This document shows, piece by piece, positions 10,358-53,829 of a DNA stretch of 64,000 bases. Under the pieces are notes generated by a model that was not told the DNA's origin, did no database searches, and was given only the letters and a program-made list of their open reading frames with translations. The stretch spans positions 3,205,665-3,269,664 of the forward strand of contig NC_092384.1 in the NCBI RefSeq assembly GCF_030028105.1, written 5' to 3'. Source of the stretch: Mobula birostris (Eukaryota). The position numbers were made by a program, and so were the translations under genes. Numbering within the stretch: position 1 is the stretch's first letter; every line of letters begins with the position of its first letter.

Positions 10358-10363
10358 CACACA

Positions 10364-10412
<49 letters not shown>

Positions 10413-10430
10413 ACACACACACACACACAC
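10358..10430. repeat. (CA)n microsatellite
   Basis: Direct; homologue at 42,164-42,226. Confidence 0.95.
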
Positions 10431-11323: not shown

Positions 11324-11432
11324 GTACAACTGGACCAACATAACTACTCATAGTGCCGAGTGACGGTCAGTACAACTGGGACCAACATAACGACTCATAG
11401 TGCCGAGGAAAGGTCAGTACAACTGGGACCAA
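11324..11432. repeat. 47-bp minisatellite, ~2.3 units
   Basis: Unit gtacaactgggaccaacataactactcatagtgccgagtgacggtca. Confidence 0.9.
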
Positions 11433-17191: not shown

Positions 17192-17302
17192 CTTTATTTT
17201 TCCTTGTAATACATCGTTTGACAATGAGAACGACCAGCAATATAGATAACAAACCGCTCAATGCACATATGGAAGTCATGACATCATTAATAATACTAGC
17301 TC
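17192..17302 (-). pseudogene. Gene A TM exon, donor lost
   Basis: ASIINDVMTSICALSGLLSILLVVLIVKRCITRKNK followed by gggaaa instead of gtaaga; read-through ends GEKI*. Confidence 0.85.
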
Positions 17303-18780
17303 CTGGAAAATTGAAATATATTAGATACAAATGAAAACTATAGGCCGTTCAAGCTAATAAATCTCCTCGTCTTTGAAACCGACATAACATCTGAAATTTA
17401 GGCACTGGTTCAATTTCCTGTAAAGTAAAAACGTAGTAGACAGATAGACATTAGATTTCGTAAATTCAATTCGAAAAAAAAGTATATATATAAAATCGGT
17501 CTCTCTAATTGATTAATAATACTTAAAAACGTTTGTCAAAACATACATTGCTTTCAGGTGTCACTTTATGAGACTGCTACTTTCAGCGAGCTATAAGGCT
17601 CTTCATCCTCTCGGGAAGTTCGTACTTAAATTCGCATAGTTTTGTGCCTTGTTGAATGGAACTTGCAACATTTTTGCACCCTGCTGGTATGCAGTACGCC
17701 ATGCCAGATGCAGGGAATGAAGAGTTGTGTTTCGGCTTGTGTTGGACACTTGCCTGTGTATGCTTTCAACGCCCTGTTCTGATTCACTTGACAATCAAAG
17801 CGGAACGGTAAGGCGACACTTGTTAGCAGACTACTGGTAACAGCATTTCTCTGGAAGTGAGCTACTCTTCGGCATTGTGATGGGGAAGCGGAAACAATGG
17901 TGGCATTGTTGCAACGAAGTTTATTTAATTAAAAACAGAACAGGAGGAAAGGAGACTGGAGGTAAACTGGACAGATGAATTGAGTCACGATAATTGTAAT
18001 TTGATCCACACAATTTTTTAGATGAAAACGTATAAAGAAGTACTTATAAAGTATCTGGAGAACATCCTTTCATTATTACCAGAAAGATTGTGGATATTTT
18101 GCCTTCATAGAGGGAGAGGATACAAATAGAAGGATAACGTACCCAGTATTTCAAAATCACTGGCTGCCATTAAGCTCTGTGCACACAGGTTAGTTGGGTT
18201 ATTAGTACTTCCAACTACAACCAGAAAAAAAAAATCAGAGAAAGAATTTGGGGGCGGATGGATGGGATGTTTTGTCGGTATACGACAAGGCTGAACATGA
18301 CGGAATATTGGAGGAAATTTACTTGGCAATTAAGGACGATCTGCTTCCTGTGGACAATAAACATCACGAGAGTTGCTCTTTTTAGCGTCTTGTGGCACCT
18401 TTAGCATCTGTCTGTTCTCATCCTAACACGGATGGAAAGCACGGGGTTCCGTCTGGATTCCAGCCTGGGATCATCTCCTCGAGGTCCGGAGCTGATGCCA
18501 CCATATCACCAGCCGTCAACACCAGTGTGTCTTAGATTTAATATATTATACAAATCGGAGAAATCGTGAGGATAAGTCTCTCAAGACACGAAACGCATTG
18601 CATCTTATGCTGGAGGAAACAGCTTCTATACAAATTATAAAAAGCTAATTTTGTATCTATTTAATAAGCACCTATTAGCGGCCACAGGGAAATCTAGCGA
18701 AAACGATTAAATGCGGAGATCGTTTAAAACTGGTTTATAGTTACCCGACTTTTTATGATAGTTGAGATCCATAGTCTCAC

Positions 18781-19082
18781 CTGTGCTGTTGTTGTAACGA
18801 AGTAAGTGGCTAGAGCAGAAACCCGGAGGGTGACGTGAGATACCAGACAAGTGCAGACCGTCCCGGTTGGCACAACCTGTGTCACTGACAATCTGCTGGA
18901 AGTTTCATATAGCCCATCCGAAGTGGAGTTGGTAACGGTCGAACCGGTTGTAATTTTGGTGCCGTCTTTATACCAGGTGAAACTGATATCGGTTGGGTAA
19001 AAGGGAGATGTAGTGCACAGAAGAGCCAAGGCTTCCGATTTCTATGGATCTCCGGAGTAAATTTTCAATGGAGCTGGAGGAA
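18781..19082 (-). pseudogene. Gene A C1-set exon with stop and frameshift
   Basis: [49 protein letters not shown]; 302 nt versus 303 nt in gene B. Confidence 0.92.
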
Positions 19083-19508
19083 CTAAGAAATAGTGGAATA
19101 GTTGCATGAATGGTTGTTACTGTTAGCTGTATATTTTCGGCAATATCAGCGTTCGATGCTATTAACATTAAAGCCAAAAAATTAAGATTACAGCGGCAGG
19201 AATTTCAGTGGCAATGGAGGAAAATATTTTTGGATAACTAACGGAGCAAATCGTCGATCATATGGGATCAGTGGCGGCTGTACTTTAAATTTCCGCAAAT
19301 CAAAGAGCTCCAGAATTTAACGTTGAAATGAATGATTATGTACAAATACATTAGCCATATTGTAATTAACGTCGTTGAATACTCATGTTTTATATAGTCA
19401 TCGCGTGCCACTACGATTAATACTGTTATTCTATTTAAGAGGGATTGTAGAAAAGACAAATTCTCAGTCGCAATGTCGCATCAACTGAATCGCTTCTAAT
19501 GCACCTAC

Positions 19509-19829
19509 CCAACACAACTAAAGTCGACCCGGTTCCGTTGCCAATCATTGTGCCCCGATGGGCGATGGTACAATAATAGACTCACGCTTCTTGTGGACGC
19601 ACGTTGACTATCTGCAGGAAGCCGTTGAACTCAGTAGTGAACCCGGTCAATTTTCTAGCGTCATGGTCTGGGTTGATGTAATTATTTTCACCCTTTTTCC
19701 ATCAATATATGTCAACGCGGGGACCCTCCGGCAAAGAGGAAGGGGAACAGTCAAAGAAAAAATTTTCACCCTTGATGGTGTAGGCGATTTTAGGGAGTTG
19801 TGTTACTTTGGCATAATATTCAACTGACC
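19509..19829 (-). pseudogene. Gene A V-set exon with two in-frame stops
   Basis: ..[51 protein letters not shown]; same 321-nt length as gene B. Confidence 0.92.
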
Positions 19830-21145
19830 CTAAGTTAAAGAAAGTCAATTCCGAATCAGTAGGAGACATTGTAAACAGTGTATACAATTGTAAATACGAA
19901 CAAGGACAAACACAAAGAGATATTCAATAACTGTTTCATTATGAAGAATGGGAAAGCCATTTACCCGTAAAATATATCATCCAAAGAAGCAGACAGTAAG
20001 ATCCCACTCTGGCCAACATTCTGGTACAAGTGATCACAGGGAGCGCGCAGTCGCGAACTGTTTCCCTGGGTTGAGCTGTCACAGGGTGTGCTGCGTCAGT
20101 CTTTCCGTGACGGTAGTGCGACTTCTGACCAATATGTGGCTAAGTTTACTTTCATTTGTGCTTATGCAAACAGCAGCGCCATTATCATCGAAACCGATTA
20201 TGTTTTTTAGATTTTAATGTTAATAACCTGCGGTGTGCAATTTCATTGGCTGAACTAACTCCCTGTTGCCCGCAATCTCACTGCACTGTCTCCTCACTCA
20301 TTCCCGCGTGTCCACTCACGTTGTTACAGAACTTTGCACCCCCACCACGCACTCCTTTAACATCTACTTAACCTACCCTTCTCCGACTCACTGCTCCACG
20401 TCTGTTTCCTCGCGAAACTTCCACCCTTGCTGCCCTTGCATCCGACAATAAAACGAACTATGGCGAAGGCACCAAAACCGTAATAGTTTTTGGCAGCTTC
20501 TATGCGCTTTGTACATAATCCTCCTAATTTCTCCGATAGGATGACAACATTTCTCGGAGGCAAAATAAGTTGTTGATTTCACAGAGTCCTCGGTTTGTGC
20601 TAAGTCTCTTTGTAGGAGGATTGCGTTACTTCATGTGAAATTTATTCCAATGACGTGAAAGCATTTCAGATGATACGGTTGAGAGACATTAAGCCATAGT
20701 ATCGCAGAGAAACAGCAGAATCATCACCATCGTCCTTAAATCAGTGAGTGACGCGCAATTCACCAAACGTTTGTCTGGAGACTGATTTGTGTTTAAAAGG
20801 GAACAGGTAGAAATTATTTTACGAATTTTGTGTAATTTCCCCTAAACCACTAATCATTTAATGATAATCAGAGACTTTGATTAGTTCTTCCTCCTTTTTT
20901 TCTGCTTTTCTGCTTTCTGCAATGCTGAAAATCTTCCTGTATTCCACGCACCTTATCAAATTACTTGGTAACATTCAGCAAAACAACCCTATCGGCTTTG
21001 ATGAGGCAGGGTGGAACAGAGAACTTGATCTGTTATCTGGATGGCAATACTCTCGGATGCTTTGAGATGATTTAATAAATAATTGGGAACACACATATTG
21101 CAGGTTTTGTTTTAAACGGAGGCAGTGTTCAATTTAAGAGAGAAA

Positions 21146-33164: not shown

Positions 33165-33320
33165 NNNNNNNNNNNNNNNNNNNNNNNNNNNNNNNNNNNN
33201 NNNNNNNNNNNNNNNNNNNNNNNNNNNNNNNNNNNNNNNNNNNNNNNNNNNNNNNNNNNNNNNNNNNNNNNNNNNNNNNNNNNNNNNNNNNNNNNNNNNN
33301 NNNNNNNNNNNNNNNNNNNN
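33165..33320. other. Assembly gap (156 N)
   Basis: Run of N at the position of a (CA)n tract in copy A. Confidence 1.
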
Positions 33321-34384: not shown

Positions 34385-37285
34385 TGTTCTAGAGCATGTT
34401 GATATTAAGGGAGAGGAGGTGTAGGAGTTGTTAAAATACATTAGGACGGATAAGTCCACGGGGCCTGACGGAATATTCCCCAGGCTGCTCCATGAACCGA
34501 GGGAAGATATTGTTGAGCCTATGGCTAGGATCTTTATGTCCTCGTTGTCCAGAGGAATGTTACCGAAGGACTGGAGGGAGGCGAATGTTGTCCCCTTGTT
34601 CAAAAAAAATTAATATTGATAATACGGGTAATGATAGACTAGTAAGTCTTACTTCTGTGGTGGGCAAGCTGTTGGAAAAAAATTCTTACATATAGGATCT
34701 ATGGGCATCTAGAGAATCATGGTGTGATCAGGGACAGTCAGCTTGGCTTTGTGAAGGGCAGATAGTGTCTAACAAGCCTGATAGAGTTCCTTGAGTAGGT
34801 GACCAGGCATATAGATGAGGGTAGTGCAGTGGATGTGATTTAAATGGATTTTAGTAAGGCATTTGACAAGGTTCCACACGGTAGGCTTATTCAGAAAGTC
34901 AGAAGGCATGGGATCCAGGGAAGTTTGGCCAGGTGGATTCAGAATTGGTTTGCCTGCAGAAGGCACAAGGTCGTGGTGGAGGGAGTACATTCAGATTGGA
35001 GGATTGTGATTAGTGATGTCCCACAAAGATGTGTTCTGGGACCTGTACTTTTCATGATTTTTATTAACGACATGGATGTGGGGTTAGAAGGGTGGTTTGG
35101 CAAGTTTGATAATCGTTTCACTCCCCGAATCATCCTCTGAGCACTCTTCAAACTTCCTTAGACTAGGAGCCCAGAACTGTTCACTATACTGAAGGCGAGG
35201 CCTTATCAGTGCCTTATAAAGCCTCAGCATCACATCCCTGCTCTTGTATTCTAGACCTCTTGAAATGAATGTTAACATTGCATTTGCGTTCTCAGCACCG
35301 ACTCAACCTGCAAGTTAATATTTAGGGTGTTCTGCACAAGGACTCTCAAGTCCCTTTACATCTCAGATTTTTGGATTTTCTCCCGGTTTATAAAATAGTC
35401 TGTACATTTATTTCTTCTACCAAAGTGCATGACCATGCAGTTTCCAACACGAATTTCATTTGCCACTTTCTTGCTCATTGTCCTAATCTGCCTGTCCTTC
35501 TGCAGCCTACCTGTTCCCTCAACACTACCTGTCTCTTTTAGTTTCTAACCCGTTTCTAAATATTCTCAGTATGAGTAACCTCCGTTTCCGATCCATCCAA
35601 ACGTCTTACATTTCACCTGTGCTCACGCGTTTGCGATCCGATGATGAATTAACTGTTTACAGTTACAGAACGTAGTAGATGCATATTGAAATAGCATAAA
35701 AAAATGGAATAATAGAACATAGGTGCAGAGAGTAGGCCATTCGGCCCATTGTGCCCGCAACGCTATTCAGTATGATCATGGCTGATCATCCAACTCAGAA
35801 TCCTGCACCTGCCTTCTTTCCATACCTACTGATCCATTTAGCCAAAAGGGCCATATTTACCTCCCTCTTAAATATAGCCAATGAACTGGCCTCAACAGTT
35901 TCCTGTGGCAGACAATTCCACAGATTCACCACTTTCTGTGTGAAGACATTTTTTTCCTGATCTCCGTCCTAAAAGGCTTCCCCTTTATCAACAAACTGCG
36001 ACCCCTCGTTCTGGACTTCCCAAACATCGGGAACAATCTTCCTGCATCTAGCCTGTCTAATCCCTTCGGGATTTGATACGTTTCCATAAGATTCCCCATC
36101 AATCTTCTAAATTCCAACGAGTATAAGACTAGCCGATCCAGTCTTTCATCAAATGAAAGTCCTGCCATCCCAGGAATCATTCTGGTGAACCTTCTTTGTA
36201 CTCCCTCTATGGCAAGAATGTCTCTCCTAACATTAGTGGACCAAAACTGCACATAGTACTCCAGGTGTGGTCTCACCAAGGCCCTGTACAACTGCAGTAG
36301 TACCTTCCTGCTCCTGTACTCGAATCCTCTTGCTATGAATGACAGCATACCATTCGCCTTTTTCACTGCCTGCTGTACCTGCATATCCACTTTCAATGAC
36401 TGGTGTATAATGACACCCAAGGAATTCTTGCACCTCCACTTTTCCTAATCAGCCACCATTCAGATAATAATCTGTTTTCCTGTTTTTGCCACCAAAGTGG
36501 ATAACCACACATTTATCCACATTAAATTGCATCCGCCATGAATTTGCCCACTCACCTAACCTATCCAGGTCACTCTGCATCCTCTTAGCATCCTCCTCAC
36601 AGCTATCACTGCCGCCCAGCTTCGTGTCATCCGCAAACTTGGAGATGCCACATTTAATTCCTTCGTCTAAGTCATTAATATATATTGTAAACAACTGGGG
36701 TCCCAGCACTGAGCCTTGCGGTACCCCACTAGTCACTGCCTGCCATTCTGAAAAGGTCCCGTTTATTCCCACTCTTTGCTTCCTGTACGCCAACCAATTC
36801 TCCATCCACATCAATACCATGCCCCCAATACCGTGTGCTTTAAGTTTGCACACTAATCTCCTGTGTGGGACCTTGTCAAAAGCCTTTTGAAAATCCAAAT
36901 ATACCACCCTCACTGATTCTCCCCTATCCACTCTACTAGTTACATCCCCAAAAAATTCTATGAGACTTGTCAGACATGAGTTTCCTTTCACAAATCCATG
37001 CTGTCTTTGTCCGACAAGTTAAACGCTTTCCAAATGCTCTGCTATAACATTTTTGATAATTGACTCTAGCATTTTCCCCACGACCGATATTAGGCTAAGT
37101 GGGCTATAATTCCCCGGTGTCTCTCTCCCTCCTTTAAAAAAAAAAGCGGGGTTACATTAGCCACACTCCAGTCCTCAGGAACTAGTCCAGAATCTAAAGA
37201 GTTTTGAATAATTATCACTTAACGCATCCACTATTTCCTGGGCTACTTCTTAATCACTCTGGGATGCAGACCATAACCTATCAAC
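34385..37285. mobile_element. CR1 cluster of copy B (RT + 34,385-35,110; - 35,130-35,530; - 35,700-37,285)
   Basis: ORFs 34844-35140, 35926-36420, 36449-36991 ([19 protein letters not shown]); orthologous to 5,070-8,305. Confidence 0.93.
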
Positions 37286-37534
37286 CGGATGGATACCGAA
37301 ATCTACGGGAGGATCGTAACTTTGGCAAAGTACTGCAACCGATTTCATCCGCTGGATATAAGGCCACGAACAGGGTCATTCGTTTGGGAACGTCGGCTTG
37401 AAATAAGGGGTTCATTTTGGTAAATTGAGACATATCTCTGTACCACTTAGGTGTACTGCTTGTTTCTTGTTGTCAAACAAGCGACATTGCAGTTAAAATT
37501 CAATCAGGTAAAACAGATTCCAGGTTCGGCACGT

Positions 37535-37702
37535 TTAGTACTTGGGATTCCGTTCCGAATAAATAACGTCGACACTTTGCATTTTGCTCGGCTGTGAATC
37601 GACTGTGTCGGTCTCCCTTCGATAAACAATTTCTGCTTTCTTGGTCTCTGCCACGGCGATTGGGGCGTAGGTCACGTTCCTATCAGGCGGCCTCTGCGTG
37701 GT
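37535..37702 (-). CDS. Gene B terminal cytoplasmic exon ([55 protein letters not shown])
   Basis: ggatttttcag| 168 nt to TAA; VTYAPI is an ITIM; additional IVY and VIYSE tyrosines. Confidence 0.75.
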   Translation of the reverse strand, partial: TTQRPPDRNVTYAPIAVAETKKAEIVYRRETDTVDSQPSKMQSVDVIYSERNPKY

Positions 37703-40700
37703 CTGAAAAATCCACATTAGTTGGGATAAGTCATTACTTTCATTTTTTAGTCATACTGAGTTTCATGTTAAATATAGTCCCGAGAACTTCGCAAAATCAC
37801 CACTATCTCAAAAGACTACCAACTAACAGTGCTTGATTCATTACCTGTAAGTATAAATAGTTGAACTTTTCCGGCCGCTTATCTCTATTTTCGCTTTACC
37901 CTTTCTGTCACGTAGATGAAATATACTGTGTACTTTAATGAAAAGATCAACGGTTTGCACAGCAGAGGAAATGCAGAATTATGATGATAGTCAAGTCATC
38001 CATCACCTAACTAAATAGCAGAGCAGCTGGATGGACCGAAGTGCCTATACTTGCTCCAAATTCCTACGTTAATACGTACCTGCGCGTAGACCGTCCTCTC
38101 TTGATTGACGGGCCCTGGAACTTTCCGGGATTTGGTAAGATCTAGTGCAGCGTAAGGCACCATCGCCTCGCTTGTAGACTGCATAGATTGAAGCACAGAA
38201 ATATACACATTTTAAAAGTGCAGGCGCCAGAAACGATCAATACGCACACACGTACAATGCCAATTATGTATCTGTATGGCCTTCATCAACGCACCTGCAC
38301 GGACAGTGCAAAAGAAAATAACATACATCGAGTCGACAAAGCTTCTCAGTGTGATCTTTGAAATGCCGCAAATTACCTTCATTCCCATACCTGCTTGATT
38401 TGCACATCACAGTCACAAAACGACAACTTCTCGCCAAGAAATCAAAGTAAGTAATAAGTAAATTCAGCTGCAGTCCATATTAGTGCTTGCAAACACATAC
38501 GGTAATTTCAGTATCTGATTACTAGCTTCACTTGGTCATAAATTAAAAGGCTATTTTCGGCTACAAGTTGTAATTAATTCCGTGCCAAAAAAAAAAAACA
38601 GAACTAGCCTGTCACTTCCTTTTGAGGATACAGTACAGAATAGGGAACTGCTATTCCAGCAGTAGTCTGAAGGTACGACCAGTCCGCCCCAGGCAAGGAC
38701 GGCAGGTATGATCGATATTGATGACATTGCTCTGGAGTTAAAAGCATCCAGTAATGGATCACCTTTTTGGTTGTTAGCAAGCAAGGTTGTTAAAAAGTGA
38801 GTTTAAAATATCAGCTTAGCAAAGTAGGGTATAATCTCCTATGAATGTTAACAGACAAAATATATTAGAAACATCAAACATAAAAAAACCTACAGTACAA
38901 TACAGGCCCTTCGGCCCACAAAGTTCTGCCGAACTTGTCCTTACCTTAGAACTACAGAGGCTTTACTCCGAACACTCTATTTTTCTAAGCTGCATGTAGC
39001 CATCTAGTAGTCTCTTAAAAGACCCCATCGTTTCCGCCTACACCTCCGCCACCGGCTGCCCATGAAAGGGATTGTGAAATAAAGAGCTGGGAAGTTTATT
39101 GGTGAAAGAAATACTGGCCAGGAGAAGGGGTAATCTAACAGGAGAGGACAGAATGCCATGGAATAAAGACAAGGGGGAGGGGCACCAGAGGAATTGCTGT
39201 GCAGGTAAAGAGATAAGGTAAGAGAGGATATAGGTATGGAGATTGGTGAAGGGCAGAGGTATTGACGGAAGTACGAGAAATCTATGATTTTGTCGTCAGT
39301 TTGGAGACTTCCCAGACGGAATATTAGGTGTTGTTCCTCCTATCTGAATGTGTCCTCATTGTGACTAGAGAAAAAGGCATGGACTGACTTTTTTCCCCTT
39401 CTCCAGGTCTGTATCTCTTTCACCAATCAAATTCCAAGCTCTTTACTCCACGCCCAGCACACCCCTCCCCTGGTGTCATCTATCACCTTGCATTTCTTCC
39501 TCCACTCACCTACCTTCTTACTCTAACTGCTTTTTTTCCCCCTCCCTGAATCTTTTTTCCCCAGTATCGATGAAGTGTCTTGGCCCGAAATGTCGACTGT
39601 TTACTCATTTCCATAGATGAAGCCTGGCCTGAAGAGTTCAATCGCACTTTGTATGTGTTGCTCCTAGAACCACATAGTAGTGCAACTCAGAACAGGCCCT
39701 TTGAGCTATCGTGCCACTCTCACTTTCAGCGTTTCATCTCTATCGATTCGATTTACCAGGACTTGTGTCCAGCACTTCTTTGTCTTTGCGATTCACGTGT
39801 TTGTATTCATGATTTTTAGGTAACACGAGTACCTGCCTGTGGTACTTTATCAGACCATAAGACCATAAGACACACGAGCCGAATTAGGCCATTTGCCCCA
39901 TCAAGTAACCTTCGTCATTCAATCATTGCTGATCCTTCTTTTTCCTCCTCAGCCTTTTTCCCGTAACCTTTGATGCTGTGTGCAAACAATAACCCAGCAA
40001 CCTTTGCCTTAGTACACCCAACAACTTGGCCTCCACAGCTGTCTGCGGTAACACATTCTACAAATTCATCATCGTCCGGCCTAAGGCATTTGTCGGCATC
40101 TCTGGAGTTTTAAGTGGACGCCCCACTATTTTCTTGTCCAAAACTTCCCCACCATGGGAAACATCCTTTCCAACATCTACGCTGTCTAGGCCTTTCAATA
40201 TTCAAAATGTTTCAATGAGATCCCCCTTCATCCTTCTAAATTCCAGCGAGTACAGACCCAGAGACACCAATGTTCCTCGTATGATAATCCTTTCACTACC
40301 CGAATCATCCGTGTGAACCTCCTCTGAGCCCTCTCCGATGCTTCCTTAGACTAGGTGCCCAGAACTGTTCATTATACTGAAGGTGAGGCCTTATCAGTGC
40401 TTTATACAGCCTCAGCATCGCATCCCTGCACTTGCATTCTAGACCTCCTGAAATGATTGTTAACATGGCATTTGCCTCCTCAGCACCGACTCAACCTGCA
40501 AGTTAATATGTAGAGTGTTCTGCACAGGGACTGCCAAGTCCCTTTATATCTCAGATTTCTGGATCCCCCCCCCCCCCCGTTTATAAATAGTCTGTACATT
40601 TATTTCTTCTACCAAAGTGCATGACCATGGAATTTCCAACACTGAATTTCATTTGCCACTTTCTTAACCATTCTCCTAATCTGTCTGTCATTCTGCAGCC

Positions 40701-42163
40701 TATCTGTTTCCACATTAGTTGGGATAAATCATGACTTTCATTTTTTAGTCATATTGAGTTTCATGTTAAATATAGTCCTGAGAACTTCGCAAAATCACCA
40801 CCGTCTCAAAAGACTACCAACTAACAGTGTTTCTTTCATTACCTGCAAGTATAAATAGTTGAACTTTTCTGGCCGCTTATCTCTATTTTCGCTCTACCTT
40901 TTCTGTCACGCAGATGAAATATACTGTATACCTTAATAAAAAGTTCAACGGTTTTCACAGCGGAGGAAATGCACAATTAGGGTGATAGTCAAGTCAACCA
41001 CAACCTTACTAAATAGCAGAGCAGCTGGATGGACCGAAATGCTTATACTTGCTCCAAATTCCCACGTTAATACGTACCTCCGCGTAGACCGTCCTCTGAT
41101 GATTCACGGATCCTGGAACTTTCCGGGATTTGGTAAGATCTAGTGCAGCGTAAGGCACCATTGCCTCGCTTGTAGACTGCATAGACTGAAACACAGAAAT
41201 ATACACATTTTAAAAGTGCAGGCGCCAGAAACTATCAATACGCGCAAACATACAATGCCAATTATGAATCTGTACGGCTTTCATCAACGCATCTGCACGC
41301 AGAGTACAAAAGAAAATAACATACATCGCGTCGACAATGCTCCTCTGTATGATATTTGATATGCCGTGAATTACATTAATTTCCATACTTGCTTTACAGT
41401 CACAAAACGACAACTTCTCGCCAAGAATTAAAAGTAAATAATAAGTAAATTCAGTTAAAGACCATATTAGTGCTTGCAACCACATACGGTAATTTCAGTT
41501 TCTGATCACTAGCTTCACTTAGTCATAAATGCAAAGCCTGTTTCCGGCTACATGTTGCAGTTAAGTCCGTGCAAGAAACCGAACTAGCCTGTCACTTTCC
41601 TTTGAGGATACAGTACAGAATAGTGAACTGCTATTCCAATAGTAGTCTGTAGGTACGACCAGTCCGCCCCTGGCAAGGACGGCAGGTGTGATCGATATTC
41701 ATGACATTTTTCTGGAGTTAAAAGCATCCAGTAATGGATCACCTTTTTGGTTGTTAGCAAGCAAGGTTGTTAAAAAGTGAGTTTAAAATATCAGCTCAGC
41801 AAAGTAGGATATAATCTCCTATTAATATTAACAGACAAAATATATTAGAGACATAACACCTAAAAAAAACTACAGTACAATACAGGCCTTCGGCCCACAA
41901 AGCTGTGCCGAAATGTCCCTACCTTAAAACTACTTAGGTAGTTTTAAGGTAGGGACTACCCAAAACTACCCATAGCCCTCTATTTTAAGGTAGGGACTAC
42001 CCAAAGTTTTAAGGTAGGGACTACCCAAAACTACCCATAGCCCTCTATTTTTCTATGTTTCATGTAGCCGTCCTGTAGTCTCTTAAAAGACCCATTCGTT
42101 TCTGCCTCCAACACCGCAACAGGCAGCCCATGAAGGGGAATACCCACGATAATGAACGTGTAG

Positions 42164-42228
<65 letters not shown>

Positions 42229-45200
42229 GCATTATTTTATATATTTTCTTAGTATTCAATCGGTTTTGGATACATACCATGCATTGATCGGATCTTTCTT
42301 CCTCCTTTTGCGTGCCTGGAAGTTAAATAAGATAAACAAAAAAAAGCATTTTGTCATCAAAGACAGAGGTTTCACATCGAGTTACTGGATATTACTAAAC
42401 ATTGCAATGGAATTGCCTCCTTTCCAGTGTTATTATAAATATTAGAATGACTGTTCTGATGTCGACGGATTTTAATGTTGGTCTTTGCCTTTGGGGCTTA
42501 CAATGCCGGCATGGAAAGAGAATTCGTCTGCAAAGTTTGTGAGAGCGCCAGTGTCTCCCGGAATGCCGGAGTTCAGCATTAATGAATTCCGAGTCACCAA
42601 AAATGCGCTGTGCATACTAAATGAATGAGAGAATCCCTTATATTTTAAATTGGAGGATATTTTCTTACGTTGAGTTACTGCTTCCAGTTCTTTTAGACGA
42701 ACAATTGTTTTTGACCACTTCAAACTAAATTCATCAGAATTTGGTGATCATTAACACAAAACCTTAGTTAATGATAGAAGGAGAACATGTTGAGATCTCA
42801 AAGCCAATCATCTCCTCACTAAGGAGAAAATAAATCAAACAGAGAAATAACGTTGCAAGTGGAGATGGTGGGGTGCATCCACCCTACCTCACAAGTGGAG
42901 ATGGTGGGGTGGATGCAAAGTTGACCACTTCTTAGGTAAAAACGGAAATAATGAAATACGCTTACGTATATTTTTCTGGATTTTCAAAAAAAGTTGAAAT
43001 GCTGCCTACATAGTAAATCAGCTTGTGACAGCTTAGAGCCTTCAGCAGAATCATCAACCCAATTTTGGGAAAGAATGCCGTAGGAAACGTATCTGCACAG
43101 AGTGAGGAGTGACGGTGAGTCAACTGAGACCAACATAACTACTCATATGCCGAGTGACGGTCAGTACAACTGGGACCAACATAACTACTCATAGTGCCGA
43201 GTGACGGTCTGTACAACTGGGACCAACATAACTACTCATATTGCCGAGGAACGGTCAGTACAACTGGGACCAATGATGTAAGTAGTTAGACTCGGAATCA
43301 ATCAGAGAGCTCCAAATTTTTATGTGACACAAATTTGAGAGAGATCCTCAGTATTGAGAACATTACAGGGGGTTATCAGAATCTTGGTAAACTGATTTAA
43401 CATGCTCGATAGTGGATTTCAACAGAAGGGACAAGGAGATCCTTCATTACTTGGAACGTTCGAATCCCATGATAGAACGTATAGGGGTCTAGGTGAATAA
43501 ACGCACGACAATCTTACACTACGTCTTTGGTGGGCAAGACCGTAAAACGCAGACAATCAAAACTCAGGTTTGGAGAGCCAAGGCTGAAAAAGAGGTACAT
43601 TATGCGAAACTTGACAGCATCTCACTCAGAGTGACCAGCAGAGCGGCCTGTCTAGAAACATCGGGCACAAACACGTTTTTTTTTGTTTTTGAAATGAATT
43701 GCAGTAATCGCACTAGAAATGTAAGGACATCGATTACATATCGAGTCTCCTTTCTCATAACAAGGACGAGGGATGGCATAATAAATGTGTTAATCTTTTA
43801 CGAAATTATTAGGTAATTCGATACAGGAAGATTGAACATAAGACCATAAGACTATAAGATAAAGGAGCAGAGGTAGGCTATTCGGCTAATCGAGTCTGCT
43901 CTGCATTGAATTACGGGCTGATCCAATTCTTTCAGTCATCCTCTTTCCCCTCCCTTCTCCCCGTACCCTTTGCTGCACTGGCTAATCAAGAACCTATCTA
44001 TCTCTGCTTTAATGCACAAAAAGAATTGGCCCCAACAGCAGCTCGTGGCAGCAAATTCCACAGATTTATCATCCTCTGACTAAAGTAATTTCTCCACATC
44101 TCTGTTGTTAGTGGCGGTTCTTCAATCCTGAAGTCGTGCCTTCTTGTCCTGGACTTCTCTGCCATGGGAAATAACTTTGTTATATCTAAGCTGTTTAGGC
44201 CTTTTAACATTCGGAATGTTCTAAGAGGTCCCCGCCGACTCCCCCCCCCCCCCCACCCTTTCTCCTGAACGCCTTGCAATACAGCCTAAGAGCTGCCAGA
44301 CATTCCTCATACTGTAACCCTTTCATTCCTGGAATCATTCTCGTAAATCTTCTCTGAACCCTCTGCAATGTCAGTGTATCTTATCTAACATAAGGAGACC
44401 AAATCTGCACACAGTACTCTGTGTGGTTTCACGAGCGCCTTACAGCCTCAACAAAAGATCCCTGCTCTTACGTTCTATGCCTCCAGAAATGAATGCCAAC
44501 ATTGCATTCGCCTTCTTACCACCGACTCAACCTAGAGGTTAACCTTCAGGGTATCCTGCACATGGAATCCCAAGTCCCTTTCCATCTCTGCATTTTGAAT
44601 TCTCTCCCCATCTAAATAATAGTCTGGCCGTTTATTTATTCCAACAAACAGCATGACCATACACTTTCCAACATTGTATTTCATTTGCCACTTCTTTGCC
44701 CATTCCCCTAAGCTTTCTAACTCTCTCTGCAGGCTCTTTGTTTCCTCAACACTACCCGCTCCTCCACCTATCTTTGTATTATGGGCAAATTTAGCTACAC
44801 ATCCATTAATCACCCAGTCCAAATCATTGACATACATCATTTAAAGCAACGGTCCCAACACCGACCCCTGTGGAATTTCACTGGTAACCGCCAGCCAGCC
44901 AGATCCCTTTATTCCCACTCTGCTTTCTGCCGCCAGCCAATGCTCCACACATGTGATCTTATCCTGCTAAGCAGCCTCATGTGCGAAACTTGTCAAAGGC
45001 CTTCTGAAAATCCAAGTACGCCACATCTATTTTATCTCATTTCTCTACCCTGCTTGTAATTTCCTCAAACAATTGCAGTAGGTTAGGCAGTCAGAATTTT
45101 CCTTTAAGAAAACCAAGCAGGCTTTGGCCTATCTTGTCATGTGCCTCCAGGTACTCCGGAACATCATCCCTGACAATCGACTGCCAACAAATTCCCAATC

Positions 45201-48200: not shown

Positions 48201-51200
48201 GTATGGCCAGAGGGTGCTGTCTAGTCTCGGAGCTCTTCCCATCCCTTCACAGACAGTCACCCTCTTATCTAACTCCTTCAGCCTCCGGGTGACTACCTCC
48301 TTGTAGCCCTTATCTATCTTCTGCTCTCGTTCCCTAATAAGTTGTAGGTCATCAAGCCGCAGCTCCAGATCGCCAACACGGTCTCTCAGGAGCTGCATCT
48401 CGGTGCACGTGTCGCAGATGTGGCCATCTGGGAGACTGGGAGTTTCCCAGGATTCCCACATCTGACACCCAGAGCAAAGTACTGACCCTAGAGACATGGT
48501 CTCTGTTCCTCCAAAAAAAAAAAAAAAAAAAAAAAATGCAAGGGATAAAAAAACGACGTCCGCTTACCTCACTGAAGCCCGAATGATCCAAAGCCCTACC
48601 ACTCTGCCTCAGACCACTGCTTTGATGACCGCTCCGCTAAGCAGTGTCTCCCTTTTATGCCTGAACGTCCCTGCTCCCCAAATCAGGATTGGTTCTCCGG
48701 TTGTAGCCGAGTTCCCGCGAGGCTTTCCCCTTTCAAACTTCGCTCCCGGACCTGTGCGCCGCCTCCTCCCCCGGAGATCTGCAACTCACGATTGGTGCGC
48801 CGGTTATAGAACAATACAGCACTATACTGGCTCTTCGGACATTCCCTTTGTGCCTACACTGTGCACTATTCCAACATATTCTCCCACATAACTTTCTGTC
48901 ATTTCTTCATACATGTGCCTATTTCAAAGTCTCTCTCTTAAATACCTTTATTAATTTGCCTCTACAACCAACCCTGGCAGCGCGTTCTACGCATTCCCAT
49001 TCTCTTTTTTATAAGAATTATTAACTTCCTGACATCTCATCTATGCTTTCTTCCAGTGGCCTTAAAAAAATATACCCCCTTATATTAGCCAGTTCTGCCC
49101 AGGAAAATAAGTCTCCGGCTGTCCACTCTATATAAGCCTCTTATCATTTTGGTAATCTTTATCACATACTCACCCATGCTACTTTGCTCCAAAGAGAAAC
49201 TTCCTAGCTCGCTTAACGTGTCCTCATCAGCTATGCTCTGTAATCCAGGCAACATTTTGGTAAATCTCCCTGGCACATTATCTAATGCTATCCCATGTTT
49301 TCAGTAATGAAGGGACCAGAAGTAAACTGAAAATTGGCAGTGTGGTCTAATCAGAGTTTTATCGTGCTGCAGTATTAGCTCGCGGCTATTGAATTCAGTC
49401 CCCCAATTAATGAAAGTTATTACTTTTTTACCCACTCAATCGCCAGACACTGCAAATTTGAGAGATCCATGAACATTGACCCAAGATACCTCTGTTCGAT
49501 GGAGGATAAGGGGTGACTTGATCGAGGTGTATAAGGTGATGAGGGGCATTAATCGCGTGGATAGTCAGAAGCTATTAATAGAGCTTAAAATCTGACACGA
49601 TGGGGCATATTTTTAATGTGCTTGCAAATAGGTATCGAGGTGCTGTAAGGGATAAGTTTTTCACACAGACCGTCGTAGGTGCGTGGAATGCACTGCTGGC
49701 GGCTTGTGGAGGCGGATACAATAGGGCTTTTTAACAGCCTGTTACATACAAACATGGAGTTTAGAAAAAAAACAGAGGACTATGAGCTAGGGAAATTCGA
49801 GGCAATCACTACGGTAGGTTACATGGTCGGCACAATATTGTAGGCCGAAGGGTCTGTAATGTGCTGTAAATATCTATGTTCTCTGTTCTAAGTCTACTCT
49901 GTTATTGCTCCCTTGTAATCTGCCTTCAAGTTCAGCCGTCGACAGTGAACTACTTCACACTTTTCCGTGTTGTAATTCATTTGTCACTTCAGAGCCCTGC
50001 TCTGCATCCTATCAATGTCCCTTTGAAACATCCGGCAAACTTCTACACGATCCACACCACCACCAATCTCCGTGTGATCTGTAATTTACTAATGAACTCT
50101 CCCACTTCCTCATTCAAGTCATTCATAAAACTCGCAAAGAGGAGGGACTCCAGAACAAATTCCAGTGGAACACGGCTGGTTGCCGTCCTGCAGGCAGAAC
50201 ACACCCTGCCTGCTACTGCTCCCTGCCTTCTATCCCCAAATCAATTCTGAACCATCTTTCCCTCTATCCCATGCCTCTTGATTTTCGGAATGAGCCTAGC
50301 ATGGGAAAGCTTGCCAAATGCCTGACTAAAATCCATATACACCACACCCACTAGCTAGAAATCCCATCCAGTCAGGCAGTGCAGCTGAACATTCAACAGG
50401 AGCTCCGAAGACCTTTTCCCTTCGGGAAGAAAGATCTTCGCCCCAAAGTCGTATGAAGTTATGTGGTGAACACAAAAACACGAGGGCGACCAAACTTCTA
50501 TCAGCCCAGGATAGAGGGAGTAGGTACAAATAGAAGCATAACGTACCGAGTATTTCAAAATCCTTGGCCCCCATTACGCTTTGTGCATACAATTTGGCTG
50601 GGATATTAGTACTTCCCAAAAAAATGCAGCGAAAGTTTGTGGGCCGGATGAATGTGATAAGTTTTGTTGAATGAGAGTGGCAATGCGAGAAGCCGAACAT
50701 GAACGGATTATTGGACATGGGCGAGCTGCTGTCGACGGTCAATGCCCGGTAGGTGTGGAGGGATTAAGACGATGAGGAAGAAGAAAACCCCAAAGGAAGT
50801 TGAAAAAGAACTGTGCCAAAATCGTATTGAGCGTATGGATTCACGACGATTTACGCTAGAGGAGCATAGATCATGGCCCGCGCTGGCGTGCCGAGATGTA
50901 CAATGTAATCAGTTGTAACCTACTGGAATGCTTAAGGAATAGATAAAACTTCTCTCTCACTCTTTCTTTACCCGCCTTCCCCTGCACGTTCAGATAATTC
51001 AGATTCTTACCTTTATTTTTCCTTGCAATGCATCGCTTCGCAATGAGAAAGACCAGCAATATAGACACCAAACCACTCAATACACATATGGAGGTCATGA
51101 CAGCATTGATAGTAGTAGCTCCTGGAAAATTGAAATATATTAGATACAAATGAAAACTGTAGGCCGTTCAAGCTAATAAATCCCCTTGTCTTTGAATCTG

Positions 51201-53829
51201 ACATCACATCTGAAATTTTCCACTGTTTTAATTTCCTGTAAAGTAAAAACGTAGTAGACAGAGATTGGATTTTGTAAAATCAATCCGAAAAAAAAAATAT
51301 ATATATATATAAATCGGTCTCTCTAACTGACTAATGATATTTAAAAAAAACGTTTGTCTAAACATACATTGCTTTCAGGTGTCACTTTATGAAACTGCTA
51401 CTTTCAGCGAGCTATAAGGCTTTTCATCCTCTCGGAAAGTTTGTATTTAAATACGCATAGTTTTGTGCCTTGTTGAATGGAACTTTTAATATGGTTGCAC
51501 TCTTCCGGTATACAGGGAATGAAGAGTTGTGTTTCGGCTTGGGATGGACACTGGCCTGTGTATGCTTTCAACGCCTATGCTGATTCACTTGACAATCAAA
51601 GCGGAACGGTAAAGCGGCACTTGTTAGCAGATTACTGGTAACAGCATTTCTCTGGAAGTGAGCTACTCTTCTGCATTGTGACGGGGAACCAGAAACAATG
51701 GTGGCATTGTTGCAACGAAGTTCATTTAATTAAAAACAGAACAGGAGGAAGGGAGACTGGCGTTAAACTGGACAAGTTATTTGAGTCACGGTAGTTGCAA
51801 TTTGATCCACGCAATTTTTTAGATGAAAAGATATAAAGAAGTACATATAAAGTACATATAAAGTATCTGGAGAACATCTTTTCATTACTATCAGAAAGAT
51901 TGTGGATATTTTGGCTTCATAGAGGGAGAGGATACAAATAGAAGGATAACGTACCCAGTATTTCAAAATCACTGGTTGCCATTAAGCTCTGTGCACGCAA
52001 TTTCGTCGGGTTATCAGTACTTCCAACGCCACACCCCCACAAAAATGCAGAGAAATAATTTGGGGGCGGATGGATGGGCTGTTTTGTTGGTGTACGACAA
52101 GGTTGAACATGCCGGATTATTGGAGGGAATTTACTTGGCAAATAAAGACGATCTGCTTCCTGTGGACAATAAACAGCACCAGATTTGCTCCTTTTCGCGT
52201 CTTGTGGCGCCTTTAGCATCTGTCTGTTCTCAACCTAACACGGATGGAAAGCACAGGGTTCCGGCTGGATTCCAGCCTGGGATCATCGCCTCGAGGTCCG
52301 GAGCTGATGGCACCACATCACCGGCCGGCAACACCAGTGTGTCTTAGATTTAACATATTATACAAATCGGAGAATTCGTGAGGATAATTCTCTCAAAACA
52401 CAAGCTCATTGCATTTTATGCCAGAGAAGGCAGCTTCCATATAAATTGTAAAAAGCTTATTTTGTATGTATTTAATAAGAACCTATTAGCGATCACAGGG
52501 AAGTCCAGCGAAAACGATTAAATGCGGATATCGTTTAAAACTGGTTTATAGATACCCGACTTTTTATGATAGTTGAAATCCATAGTCTCACCTGTGCTGT
52601 TGTTGATAACGATGTAAGTGGCTAGTGCAGAAACCCGGAGGCTGACGTGAGATACCAGACAAGTGTAGGCTGTCCCGGTTGGCACAACCTGTGTCACTGA
52701 CAATCTGCTGGATGCTTCATATAGCCCATCCGAAGTGGAGGTGGTAACAGGTGAACCGGTTGTAATTTTGCTGCCATCTTTATACCAGGTGAGACTGATA
52801 TGCATTGGGTAATAGGGAGATGTAGTGCACAGTAGAGCCAAGGCTTCCGATTTCTCTGGATCTCCGGAGTAAATTTTCAATGGAGCTGGAGGAACTAAGA
52901 AATAGTGGAATAGATAGATGAATGGTTGTTTACGGTTAGCTGTATATTCTCGGCAATATCAGCCTTCGATGTTATTAACATAAAAGGCAAAAAAAAAAGT
53001 AACAACGCCGGGATTTTAAATTGCAATGGAGGAAAATAGTTTTTGATAACTAACGGAGCAAATCGCCGATCATGTGAGATCAGTGGCGGCTGTACTTTAA
53101 TTTTCCGCAACTCAAAGAGCTCCAGAATTTTACGTTGAAATGAATGATTATGTACAAATACATTAGCCAGATTTTAATTAATGTCGTTGAATACTCTTGT
53201 TTTATATAGTCTGCGCGTGCCGCTACTATTAATACTGTTATTCTATTTAAGAGGCATTGTACAAAAGACAATTTCTCAGTCGCAATCGCATCAACGGAAT
53301 CGATTCTAATTCACCTACCCAACACAACTAAAGTTGAACCGGTTCCGTTGCCAATCATTGTGCCCTGATGGGCGATTGTACAATAATAGACTCCCGCATC
53401 TTGTGGAAGCACGTTGACTATCTTCAGGAAGCCGCTGAATTTAGTGCTGAAGCCGGTCAATTCTCTGGTGTCATAGTCTGGTTTGATATAACTATTTTCA
53501 CCCTTTTTCCACCAATATATGTCAACGCGGGGACCCTCCGGCAAGGAGGAAAGGGAACAGTCAAAGGAAATATTTTCACCCTTCAAGATGTTGGCGGTTT
53601 TAGGGAGTTGTGTTACGTTGACAGATGGTTCAACGAACCCTAAATTAAAGAAAGGCAATTCCGAATCAGTAAGAGACATTATAAAGAGTGTATACAATTG
53701 TAAAGACGAACAAGAACAAACATAAAGAGATATTTAATAACTGTTTCATTCTGAAGAATGGGAAAAACATTTACCCGCAAAATATATCATCCAAAGAAGC
53801 AGACAGTGAGGTCCCTCGCTGGCTAACAT
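37535..53829 (-). CDS. Intact SIRP-like non-rearranging VJ-C1 inhibitory Ig-superfamily receptor (gene B), spliced model ~361 aa (397 aa with stalk exon)
   Basis: Exons 53829-53775, 53639-53319, 52894-52592, (52342-52235), 51121-51011, 38355-38327, 38178-38080, 37702-37535. All have AG/GT boundaries, phases 1-1-1-1-1-0-0 chain correctly, 1086 nt without stalk = 361 aa + stop, no internal stops. Joining TM to the distant cytoplasmic exons is inference. Confidence 0.75.
38080..38178 (-). CDS. Gene B cytoplasmic ITIM exon ([33 protein letters not shown])
   Basis: ctatgcag| 99 nt, phase 0-0 |gtacgt; VPYAAL fits ITIM consensus (I/V/L/S)xYxx(L/V/I). Confidence 0.8.
38327..38355 (-). CDS. Gene B candidate cytoplasmic micro-exon ([10 protein letters not shown]), phase 1-0
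   Basis: atttcaaag| 29 nt |gtatgt; donor conserved in all three homologues (gtaagt at 9344, gtatgt at 41324); supplies the phase change needed between TM and ITIM exon. The acceptor position is uncertain. Confidence 0.5.
39065..39665 (+). mobile_element. Interspersed repeat ending in a gatgaag..ggcccgaaa..gtcgac motif (Penelope-like terminal-repeat candidate)
   Basis: Motif at 39,567-39,597; a reverse-complement end fragment of a related repeat occurs near 5,020-5,065. Confidence 0.45.
39850..40709 (-). mobile_element. CR1 3' fragment with (GACCATAA)n tail
   Basis: Tail at 39,852-39,872; LYKALIRP region; its other end abuts the start of the internal duplicate at 40,710. Confidence 0.85.
40710..42138. 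repeat. Internal duplicate of 37,712-39,070 (micro-exon + ITIM exon block, lacking the terminal exon)
   Basis: Starts ccacattagttgggataa at both 37712 and 40710 and stays colinear to the CR1 tail (..gcccatgaa). Confidence 0.9.
41078..41176 (-). CDS. Second, duplicated ITIM exon within gene B ([33 protein letters not shown])
   Basis: Intact cag| and |gtacgt sites, open frame, Tyr motifs intact; lies in the internal duplication 40,710-42,138. Confidence 0.6.
42164..42226. repeat. (CA)n microsatellite
   Basis: Direct. Confidence 0.95.
43117..43272. repeat. 47-bp minisatellite, ~3.3 units
   Basis: Same unit as 11,324-11,432, one more copy. Confidence 0.9.
43843..48800 (-). mobile_element. Near-full-length degenerate CR1 LINE (5' UTR, ORF1 Zn-finger/zipper + esterase, EN, RT, tail)
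   Basis: ORF 48132-48497 ([23 protein letters not shown]), 46889-47209 ([12 protein letters not shown]), EN 45943-46756, RT 44532-44840, tail gaccataagactataag. Confidence 0.93.
47394..48089 (+). mobile_element. Non-autonomous retroelement with (ATCTA)n tail nested in CR1 ORF1
   Basis: GC-rich 5' end ggaggagaagatagcggcgcgacgcagctcgc.., caataaa, then ataatctaatctcatctaatctaatc; splits ORF1 between 47,390 and 48,090. Confidence 0.65.
51011..51121 (-). CDS. Gene B transmembrane exon ([36 protein letters not shown])
   Basis: ttttccag| 111 nt |gtaaga; ~21 uncharged hydrophobic residues followed by basic stop-transfer KRxxxRKNK. Confidence 0.88.
52235..52342 (-). CDS. Gene B candidate stalk or secretory-tail exon ([36 protein letters not shown])
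   Basis: ctaag| 108 nt open in phase 1-1 |gttgag (weak donor); open in the same frame in copy A (18423-18530); read-through gives G-stop in both copies. Confidence 0.45.
52592..52894 (-). CDS. Gene B exon 3: Ig C1-set domain
   Basis: tttcttag| [53 protein letters not shown] |gtgaga; 303 nt, phase 1-1; C1 motifs (F/Y)xPxxIxxxW and YxCxVxH. Confidence 0.92.
53319..53639 (-). CDS. Gene B exon 2: Ig V-set domain with germline J-like G strand
   Basis: ttag| [48 protein letters not shown] |gtaggt. Canonical C-W-C, DxGxYYC and GxGxxLxV; SLPEGP before the Trp resembles SIRP V (SLxPVGP). Confidence 0.93.
53775..53829 (-). CDS. Gene B exon 1: signal peptide [18 protein letters not shown](G)
   Basis: ATG at 53829, hydrophobic core CLLLWMIYF, phase-1 donor G|gtaaat; homologous leader in copy A. 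Confidence 0.85.

What the first reader, a model, noticed from the sequence alone, without database searches (positions are those of the whole stretch)
37712..42138. Internal duplication gives gene B two intact, phase-symmetric ITIM exons
Seen: 37,712-39,070 is repeated at 40,710-42,138. The duplicate stops just short of the terminal-exon acceptor, so it adds a second micro-exon region and a second 99-nt phase 0-0 ITIM exon (41078-41176) but no second terminal exon. The homologous micro-exon acceptor is mutated (aaag to aaat), but an in-phase cag gives a 20-nt alternative (41325-41344). Copy A has only one block. Inference: alternative splicing could yield tails with one or two VPYAAL modules, i.e. 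exon duplication tuning inhibitory strength.
Basis: partly seen in the sequence, partly recalled or inferred. Interest (0 to 1): 0.7.

Follow-up and report, generated by a model that had tools for sequence, protein, structure and literature searches.

The report
Manta immune-brake gene with doubled ITIM exon
A manta-ray gene for an inhibitory immune receptor carries an old internal duplication, and its RNA joins both copies of a 99-base exon in series, so the tail holds three "off-switch" (ITIM) motifs, not two; this is a tidy but unsurprising example of exon duplication.

Summary
The repeat is real: 37711-39071 and 40709-42139 are about 90% identical. A transposon-rich spacer of 1.6 kb separates them. 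It is not an assembly artefact. The copies differ by 10%, have different flanks, and show equal depth in a DNA run. One RNA contig reads through both ITIM exons.

The second 99-nt exon (41078-41176) is intact and used. RNA-type contigs from two samples carry the junction 41078→38178, and then 38080→37702.

The real 38-nt micro-exon is 42315-42278. It lies upstream of the duplicated block and is not duplicated.

With it, gene B has eight exons and encodes 397 aa: leader, V, C1, TM, micro-exon, two 33-aa VPYAAL modules and a terminal exon. A Mobula hypostoma RefSeq model also has 397 aa, is 88% identical, and has the same two modules. The shark, skate and chimaera relatives I read have at most one module.

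Only the two-module form was seen. Alternative one- or two-module splicing is untested. Copy A is a one-block pseudogene. Earlier notes of this scan cover this receptor family on neighbouring DNA.

The parts
53775..53829 (-). Leader exon of gene B ([18 protein letters not shown] + first base of the Gly codon)
   Evidence: tblastn of P0013; donor G|gtaaat; the assembled CDS is open.
53319..53639 (-). V-type (VJ-like, ...[11 protein letters not shown]) Ig exon, phase 1-1
   Evidence: Pfam V-set/Ig_3; matches P0013; splice sites.
52592..52894 (-). C1-set Ig exon, phase 1-1
   Evidence: Pfam C1-set, E 1.4e-12; 88.7% identical to P0013.
51011..51121 (-). Transmembrane exon (no charged residue in the helix; ends ...KRCIARKNK + G), phase 1-1
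   Evidence: Sequence; tblastn; splice sites.
42278..42315 (-). True 38-nt cytoplasmic micro-exon (G|[12 protein letters not shown]), single copy, upstream of the duplicated block
   Evidence: 12 of 12 residues identical to the linker of P0001. Strong acceptor ttatcttatttaacttccag and donor gtatgt. Copy A has the equivalent exon at 10518-10480, identical to the P0013 linker. Not covered by RNA here, because my laid stretch ended at 42300.
41078..41176 (-). Upstream (duplicate) 99-nt ITIM exon: [33 protein letters not shown]
   Evidence: RNA contigs X22 record 10 and X5 record 25 join 41078 to 38178 with no mismatches; splice sites are intact.
38080..38178 (-). Downstream 99-nt ITIM exon: [33 protein letters not shown]
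   Evidence: RNA contigs X22 record 10 and X5 records 24 and 25.
37535..37702 (-). Terminal coding exon (VTYAPI ITIM, IVYRRE, VIYSER, stop TAA at 37537-37535); the 3' UTR continues below 37300
   Evidence: RNA contigs join 38080 to 37702 and cover 37300-37702; sequence.
37711..39071 (-). Downstream copy of the duplicated block; it keeps the ancestral 3' context (the terminal exon)
40709..42139 (-). Upstream copy of the duplicated block; it keeps the ancestral 5' context ((GT)n plus flank shared with copy A)
   Evidence: It contains a 65-bp local tandem insertion at 41940-42051 (family D8).
39072..40708 (.). Spacer between the two copies. It holds a 5'-truncated LINE fragment (about 39848-40708, coding strand minus) that starts exactly at the breakpoint. 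It also holds a 378-bp element with 60-bp inverted ends (39074-39451).
   Evidence: blastn against other LINE copies in the window at 84-86%; word depth of 10^4-10^5 in the DNA run (table 2).
38327..38355 (-).
   Evidence: Pyrimidine fraction 0.50; 5 of 29 bases differ between the copies; no homologue carries its peptide.

Best explanation
Gene B is an intact manta-ray (Mobula birostris) gene of eight exons on the minus strand. It encodes a type I membrane receptor of 397 aa: leader, V, C1, TM and an ITIM tail. It belongs to the shark-and-ray family that databases call SIRP-alpha-like.

An old tandem duplication of about 1.4 kb of intron plus exon copied the 99-nt, phase 0-0 tyrosine-motif exon. 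It did not copy the micro-exon upstream or the terminal exon downstream. LINE-derived DNA now fills the junction between the copies.

Both exon copies are spliced in series (micro-exon, exon at 41176-41078, exon at 38178-38080, terminal exon). The tail therefore carries two 33-aa modules, each with a VPYAAL ITIM and a TVYA tyrosine 22 residues later, followed by VTYAPI. That makes three canonical ITIMs where a one-module tail has two.

Shown here: the duplication, the intact splice sites, the junctions 41078->38178 and 38080->37702 in RNA contigs, and a two-module model in a sister species.

Inferred: the junctions 51011->42315 and 42278->41176 (by homology); that the two-module form is the main one; and that the extra tyrosine pair adds a docking unit for tandem-SH2 phosphatases (SHP-1/SHP-2) and so strengthens inhibition.
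For: - Repeat: (89.8% identity). The upstream copy shares its 5' flank with copy A, and the downstream copy shares its 3' flank with copy A.
- RNA (table 8): X22 record 10 (294 nt) lies on 37563-37702, 38080-38178 and 41078-41132. X5 record 25 lies on 38114-38178 and 41078-41141. X5 record 24 lies on 37483-37702 and 38080-38142. None has a mismatch over the two ITIM exons (record 24 has one, at the 3'-UTR SNP 37516). In the unique, non-repeat parts these runs cover exons only, which marks them as RNA.
- The junction cannot be a graph artefact. One 31-mer spans a base specific to the upstream exon, 3 nt before the joint, and a base specific to the downstream exon, 15 nt after it.
- DNA run X1: unique pieces of both copies and of the spacer all have depth of about 40-60.
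- The assembled CDS is 1194 nt, open, and gives 397 aa. It aligns without gaps to P0013, at 87.7% identity. P0013 has the linker GTQKEEETSDQFR followed by two STSEAMV[S/P]YAAL...TVYAQ modules.
- Motif scan: VPYAAL twice plus VTYAPI.
- One module at most in Heptranchias, Heterodontus, Amblyraja and Callorhinchus.
Against: - The exon is no more conserved than the surrounding intron: 7 of 99 versus 130 of 1242 differences, p = 0.39. dN/dS is about 0.45 from 7 changes. Sequence alone shows no selection on the second copy.
- The runs are RNA only by the tool's guess and by their exon-only coverage. Both come from one study.
- Contigs drop minor isoforms, so one-module forms may exist.
- The 5' 35 nt of the upstream exon (41142-41176) and the micro-exon were not covered. 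Nothing was laid above 42142 in the RNA runs, and my stretch ended at 42300.
- No phosphorylation or SHP binding data exist.
- Whether P0013 is the true orthologue is not settled. Its micro-exon peptide equals copy A's, not gene B's.
Confidence: 0.75

Rival explanations
1. Regulated cassette use. Either 99-nt exon can be skipped, so cells make tails with one or two VPYAAL modules and set the inhibitory dose by splicing.
For: - Both exons are symmetric (phase 0-0, 99 nt), so skipping either keeps the frame.
- A Heterodontus paralogue model (P0009) goes from the micro-exon straight to the terminal exon with no module.
- The manta paralogue P0001 has one module.
- Contigs cannot exclude minor forms.
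Against: - Only the two-module junction was seen, in both expressing samples.
- X22 record 10 runs unbranched through all three exons.
- In X5 the contig with the 41078->38178 joint (depth 10.7) is about as deep as the contig joining the downstream and terminal exons (12.7). This is a weak measure.
- The splice sites of the two exons are nearly identical and good.
Confidence: 0.2
2. The upstream copy is a decaying pseudo-exon that is included by accident and adds nothing useful: neutral exonisation on its way to loss.
For: The exon is not significantly more conserved than the intron, and dN/dS is about 0.45 from very few sites. Copy A shows that this family decays readily.
Against: - About 5% divergence per copy has left the frame, both tyrosines and both splice sites intact.
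- Both tyrosines are also kept in both modules of the M. hypostoma protein.
- The pseudogene copy A, by contrast, lost the ITIM tyrosine (VPNAAL).
- The exon is included in mRNA in two samples.
Confidence: 0.1
3. Assembly artefact: two haplotypes of one block placed in tandem.
For: None beyond the general risk in repeat-rich regions. A possible heterozygous site at 38112 shows that the individual is polymorphic here.
Against: - The copies diverge by 10% and by many indels.
- The copies have different flanks, each matching one side of copy A.
- Unique pieces of both copies and of the spacer have equal depth of about 40-60 in DNA run X1.
- One RNA contig contains both exons in cis, each with its own diagnostic bases.
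- The independent assembly of M. hypostoma has a two-module gene model.
Confidence: 0.02

Closest known systems
SIRP-alpha (PTPNS1/SHPS-1), mammalian inhibitory receptor with V-C1-C1 ectodomain (structure: PMC2785349)
   Same: - Non-rearranging V domain with a J-like GxGTxL motif, followed by a C1-set domain.
- Type I membrane protein whose tail tyrosines come in pairs about 22-26 residues apart.
- NCBI names the shark homologues 'tyrosine-protein phosphatase non-receptor type substrate 1-like'.
- The SIRP-alpha V and C1 domains are among the PDB hits.
   Different: - Gene B has one C1 domain, not two.
- PDB similarity to SIRP-alpha (E 1e-5 to 1e-8) is no better than to antibody, MHC or other Ig domains.
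- The tail motifs are VPYAAL/TVYAQ/VTYAPI rather than ITYADL/TEYASI.
- The ligand is unknown.
- The second tyrosine pair arose by a recent exon duplication that is still visible in the DNA.
Mobula hypostoma RefSeq model 'tapasin-related protein-like' (P0013, 397 aa)
   Same: Same length, 87.7% identity with no gaps, and the same order: leader, V, C1, TM, 13-aa linker, two 33-aa modules, terminal exon.
   Different: It is an automatic model with a misleading name, and I found no description of it. Its linker peptide equals that of manta copy A. Its locus DNA could not be fetched, so shared breakpoints are unproven.
PECAM-1 (CD31) cytoplasmic cassette exons (exon 14 tyrosine; PMC2132561)
   Same: The tail is built from short exons, and a tyrosine-motif exon behaves as a removable cassette that changes signalling.
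   Different: In PECAM-1 alternative splicing is demonstrated and the exons are not recent duplicates. Here the duplication is demonstrated and alternative splicing is not.
Tandem exon duplication in general, and multi-ITIM receptors such as LILRB (PMC7944505)
   Same: An in-frame duplicated exon adds a repeat of a signalling motif. The number of ITIMs varies between family members.
   Different: Here the event can be dated relative to a neighbouring paralogue. Its breakpoints and its LINE-filled junction are still readable.

Membership tests
ITIM-bearing inhibitory Ig-superfamily receptor | Type I membrane protein with Ig ectodomain, signal peptide and an uncharged TM helix | tested here: met
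   Pfam V-set/Ig_3 and C1-set. Leader [42 protein letters not shown] has no charged residue.
ITIM-bearing inhibitory Ig-superfamily receptor | Cytoplasmic (S/I/V/L)xYxx(I/V/L) motif(s) | tested here: met
   VPYAAL at tail positions 29 and 62, and VTYAPI at 98.
ITIM-bearing inhibitory Ig-superfamily receptor | Tyrosine phosphorylation and recruitment of SHP-1, SHP-2 or SHIP | not testable with these tools
   No biochemical data; inferred from the motif and the 22-residue spacing of the tyrosine pairs.
SIRP family (SIRP-alpha type) | V-C1-C1 ectodomain | tested here: not met
   Gene B and P0013 have V plus a single C1. The skate P0014 has V-C1-C1.
SIRP family (SIRP-alpha type) | Specific sequence kinship to SIRP-alpha over other Ig proteins | tested here: inconclusive
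   SIRP-alpha chains hit at E 2.8e-8 (C1) and 6e-6 (V), below antibody and other Ig hits. NCBI's 'SIRP-alpha-like' names are automatic.
SIRP family (SIRP-alpha type) | CD47 binding | not testable with these tools
   Not addressed.
Tandem exon duplication giving an in-frame repeat | Two adjacent homologous exons in one gene, each a multiple of 3 nt, with the same phase and intact splice sites | tested here: met
   99 nt each, phase 0-0, 93% identical, cag|...|gtacgt.
Tandem exon duplication giving an in-frame repeat | Both copies present in one mature transcript | tested here: met
   X22 record 10 and X5 record 25.
Alternatively spliced cassette exon | Transcripts both with and without the exon | tested here: inconclusive
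   Only inclusion was seen. Contigs cannot show absence of minor forms, and the micro-exon junctions were not covered.

The most novel reading that the evidence does not exclude
The two symmetric ITIM exons are used as a regulated cassette pair. Different cell types or activation states would then make one-module or two-module tails. A recent exon duplication would have given this ray a splice-controlled dial for inhibitory signal strength, perhaps repeated in paralogues of the same cluster.
Probability: 0.2. Interest if true: 0.5.

Novelty: new variant of a known kind. Interest (0 to 1): 0.35.

Why it matters
This is a clean, datable case of how the inhibitory capacity of an immune receptor can grow. 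One tandem duplication copied a phase-symmetric exon that encodes a tyrosine pair. Both copies are spliced into the message.

It also corrects the gene model of what appears to be an unannotated manta gene: no protein of the window turned up in the length range searched. The micro-exon sits outside the duplicated block.

It supplies a natural one-module versus two-module series (P0001 versus gene B or P0013). That series could be used to test how ITIM number affects SHP recruitment.

It does not change current understanding of inhibitory receptors, and a database model in a sister species already shows the same tail.

Tried and rejected
The acceptors are poor, the two copies are not conserved there, and no homologue has the peptide. 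Homologues show [12 protein letters not shown](M/R), encoded at 42315-42278.
2. **Haplotig artefact: rejected**.
3. **My read laying stretch (37300-42300) was chosen before I found the true micro-exon and cuts it.** The junctions 51011->42315, 42278->41176 and 42278->38178 therefore went untested.
4. **Search for RNA-derived protein fragments of the tail** with a tail profile: only P0001 and an unrelated chimaera protein were found.
5. **Profile search for gene B's own annotated protein**: nothing from this window appeared among proteins of 0.55-1.75 times the 335-aa query, so gene B looks unannotated there. This says nothing about fragments outside that range.
6. **Locus DNA of P0013 (M. hypostoma) and P0001:** Shared breakpoints could not be checked.
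8. **Conservation test of exon versus intron:** not significant.
9. **Literature**: no paper on this shark-and-ray family or on ITIM-exon duplication in it.
10. **N runs** at 12403-12552 and 33165-33320 were left untouched.
Full report
**1. The observation**

The repeat finder finds direct repeats between 37711-39071 and 40709-42139, in four collinear pieces of 81-93% identity offset by 2980-3068 bases. A three-way alignment with the paralogous tail of copy A gives these identities:
- downstream versus upstream copy: 89.8% (1204 of 1341 aligned bases, 111 gap columns);
- downstream copy versus A: 88.8%;
- upstream copy versus A: 88.3%.

The internal duplication is therefore almost as old as the split between genes A and B.

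The unique 1.17 kb of the block occurs exactly three times in the window. Its first 190 bases or so are the 3' end of a common repeat.

Homology stops at ...ctaatgtgg, 9 nt before the terminal exon.

**2. It is not an artefact**

- The upstream copy is preceded by a (GT)n tract and a flank that align with copy A's upstream flank. The downstream copy is followed by the terminal exon, as in A. This is the layout of a true tandem duplication.
- In DNA run X1, unique pieces of both copies and of the spacer have similar depth: 45.1 at 37806-38039, 43.7 at 40669-40863, 39.8 at 40881-41032, 59.5 at 41308-41421, and 41-52 in the spacer (table 8). Two haplotypes placed in tandem would not be expected to match the single-copy spacer in depth.
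- X1 may be the individual that was assembled, so this checks copy number but is not an independent genome.

**3. The spacer (39072-40708)**

- On the minus strand, a 5'-truncated LINE fragment starts exactly at the breakpoint (40708) and runs to about 39848. It is 84-86% identical to other LINE copies in the window.
- Further on lies a 378-bp element with 60-bp inverted ends (39074-39133 and 39392-39451), which abuts the downstream copy.
- Word depths of 10^4-10^5 confirm that the spacer is repetitive DNA (table 2).
- Whether the LINE took part in the duplication or inserted later cannot be decided here.

**4. The gene**

tblastn with two database proteins found through the terminal exon places every exon of gene B on the minus strand:

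| Exon | Coordinates |
|---|---|
| Leader | 53829-53775 |
| V | 53639-53319 |
| C1 | 52894-52592 |
| TM | 51121-51011 |
| Micro-exon | 42315-42278 |
| ITIM exon, upstream copy | 41176-41078 |
| ITIM exon, downstream copy | 38178-38080 |
| Terminal | 37702-37535 |

- All have AG/GT boundaries and pyrimidine fractions of 0.60-0.80.
- The phases fit: 1-1 for the Ig and TM exons, and 0-0 for the ITIM exons.
- The joined CDS is 1194 nt with one stop, at its end, and gives 397 aa.
- Pfam calls V-set/Ig_3 and C1-set for the two Ig exons.

**5. The micro-exon**

Neither is supported:
- The acceptor contexts are purine-rich (pyrimidine fraction 0.50).
- The two copies differ at 5 of 29 bases there.
- No homologue contains the peptide.

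The manta paralogue P0001 instead reads ...[34 protein letters not shown]. Twelve of those residues are encoded, letter for letter, at 42316-42281, behind a strong acceptor and before gtatgt. Copy A has the same exon at 10518-10480.

This exon lies upstream of the (GT)n tract and so outside the duplicated block. The duplication added one exon, not a micro-exon plus an exon.

**6. RNA**

Two runs of the same species, from different samples of one study, hold 36% and 22% of the words of 37420-38200. When laid, they cover the unique sequence only at exons. That is what marks them as RNA, since the tool only guesses the library type.

| Run and record | Length | Lies on | Mismatches |
|---|---|---|---|
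| X22 record 10 | 294 nt | 37563-37702 + 38080-38178 + 41078-41132 | 0 |
| X5 record 25 | 129 nt | 38114-38178 + 41078-41141 | 0 |
| X5 record 24 | 283 nt | 37483-37702 + 38080-38142 | 1 (SNP at 37516) |

- The junction 41078->38178 is a forward splice.
- The two exons differ 3 nt before the joint (GCGGAG versus GCGCAG) and 15 nt after it (GGCG versus GGCA). A single 31-mer therefore spans both diagnostic bases, and a de Bruijn graph cannot invent the joint.
- Run X27 shows no coverage of the gene.
- Nothing was laid on 41142-41176 or on the micro-exon. What is spliced to 41176 is therefore inferred from homologues.

**7. Relatives**

- P0013 is a RefSeq model of Mobula hypostoma named 'tapasin-related protein-like'. 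It has 397 aa and reads ...[103 protein letters not shown]....
- Gene B aligns to P0013 without gaps, at 87.7% identity. An independent assembly and annotation thus shows the same two-module tail.
- The most economical reading is that the duplication predates the split of the two Mobula species.
- One module is found in Heptranchias (P0006), Heterodontus (P0012, P0007), Amblyraja (P0014) and Callorhinchus (P0015). The Heterodontus paralogue P0009 has none.
- The module itself (xPYAxL ... RTVYAQ) is therefore shared by sharks, rays and a chimaera, while its doubling was seen only in Mobula among the relatives read.

**8. What it probably does**

- The tail has VPYAAL at positions 29 and 62 and VTYAPI at 98, counted from KRCIARKNK. 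Its tyrosines are at 31, 53, 64, 86, 100, 115, 136 and 143.
- Each module is a tyrosine pair 22 residues apart. From established knowledge of SIRP-alpha, PECAM-1 and PD-1, pairs spaced about 20-30 residues apart engage the tandem SH2 domains of SHP-1 and SHP-2.
- By that reasoning the duplication adds one more bidentate docking unit. This step is inference and nothing here tests it.

**9. Selection**

- The exon copies differ at 7 of 99 bases, against 130 of 1242 in the rest of the block (p = 0.39). dS is 0.12 and dN 0.054. This is no evidence either way.
- Softer evidence: all four module copies in the two species keep the frame and both tyrosines. Copy A has lost the ITIM tyrosine (VPNAAL). 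It also carries in-frame stops in its V exon (two) and C1 exon (one).

**10. Alternative splicing**

- Only the two-module form was seen.
- In X5 the contig carrying the 41078->38178 joint has depth 10.7, against 12.7 for the contig joining the downstream and terminal exons. X22 has one unbranched contig across all three exons. This hints that double inclusion dominates.
- Contig depth is a poor measure, and contigs drop rare variants.

**11. Comparison and novelty**

- The receptor belongs to a shark-and-ray family that databases predict under SIRP-alpha-like and other automatic names. Earlier notes of this scan met the same family on neighbouring DNA.
- It works like a SIRP-alpha-type inhibitory receptor. 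It fails the V-C1-C1 criterion, and its similarity to SIRP-alpha is no stronger than to other Ig proteins.
- Tails built from short exons with removable tyrosine exons are known from PECAM-1 (PMC2132561).
- I found no paper on this family or on this duplication.
- I rate it a new variant of a known kind: well supported, of modest interest.

Noticed in passing
window 8568-20019 (minus strand), copy A: Copy A looks like a pseudogene. It has in-frame stops in the V exon (VDIY*WKK and PQEA*VYYC) and in the C1 exon (SGDP*KSE). Its single ITIM exon reads VPNAAL (Tyr to Asn; the exon is 9196-9098). The original terminal-exon acceptor is mutated (ttcag to ttctg), with a possible new one 9 nt downstream.
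   Followed up: partly
window 38112: DNA run X1 shows G>A at about half depth (117 of 218). On the coding strand this changes CCC to TCC (Pro to Ser) in the downstream module, the residue that the upstream module has. It may be an allele or a trace of gene conversion. The RNA contigs carry the reference base.
   Followed up: no
window 39074-39133 and 39392-39451: A 60-bp inverted repeat (83% identity) bounds a 378-bp element that directly abuts the downstream copy of the block. It looks like a miniature transposon. Depth in the read runs is very high.
   Followed up: no
window 42150-42230 and 10340-10440: A (GT)n microsatellite sits at the same intron position, just after the micro-exon, in both gene B and copy A. 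It has therefore persisted since the gene duplication.
   Followed up: no
window 43148-43288: Three tandem copies of a 47-nt unit lie in the long intron (family D5).
   Followed up: no
window 37179-37512 (approx.): RNA contigs continue from the stop codon to below 37300, towards a LINE reverse-transcriptase fragment (36452-37018, Pfam RVT_1). The 3' UTR is at least about 240 nt long and may end in transposon sequence. No AATAAA is apparent near the stop.
   Followed up: no
P0009 versus P0012 (Heterodontus francisci): Two horn-shark paralogue models differ by the presence or absence of the tyrosine-pair module between the micro-exon and the terminal exon. This fits a dispensable cassette in this family.
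   Followed up: no
P0010 (Hemitrygon akajei) and P0019 (Leucoraja erinacea): Family members with the same V-C1 ectodomain have short tails without ITIMs. P0010 has an Arg near the start of its TM segment, which suggests paired activating counterparts.
   Followed up: no
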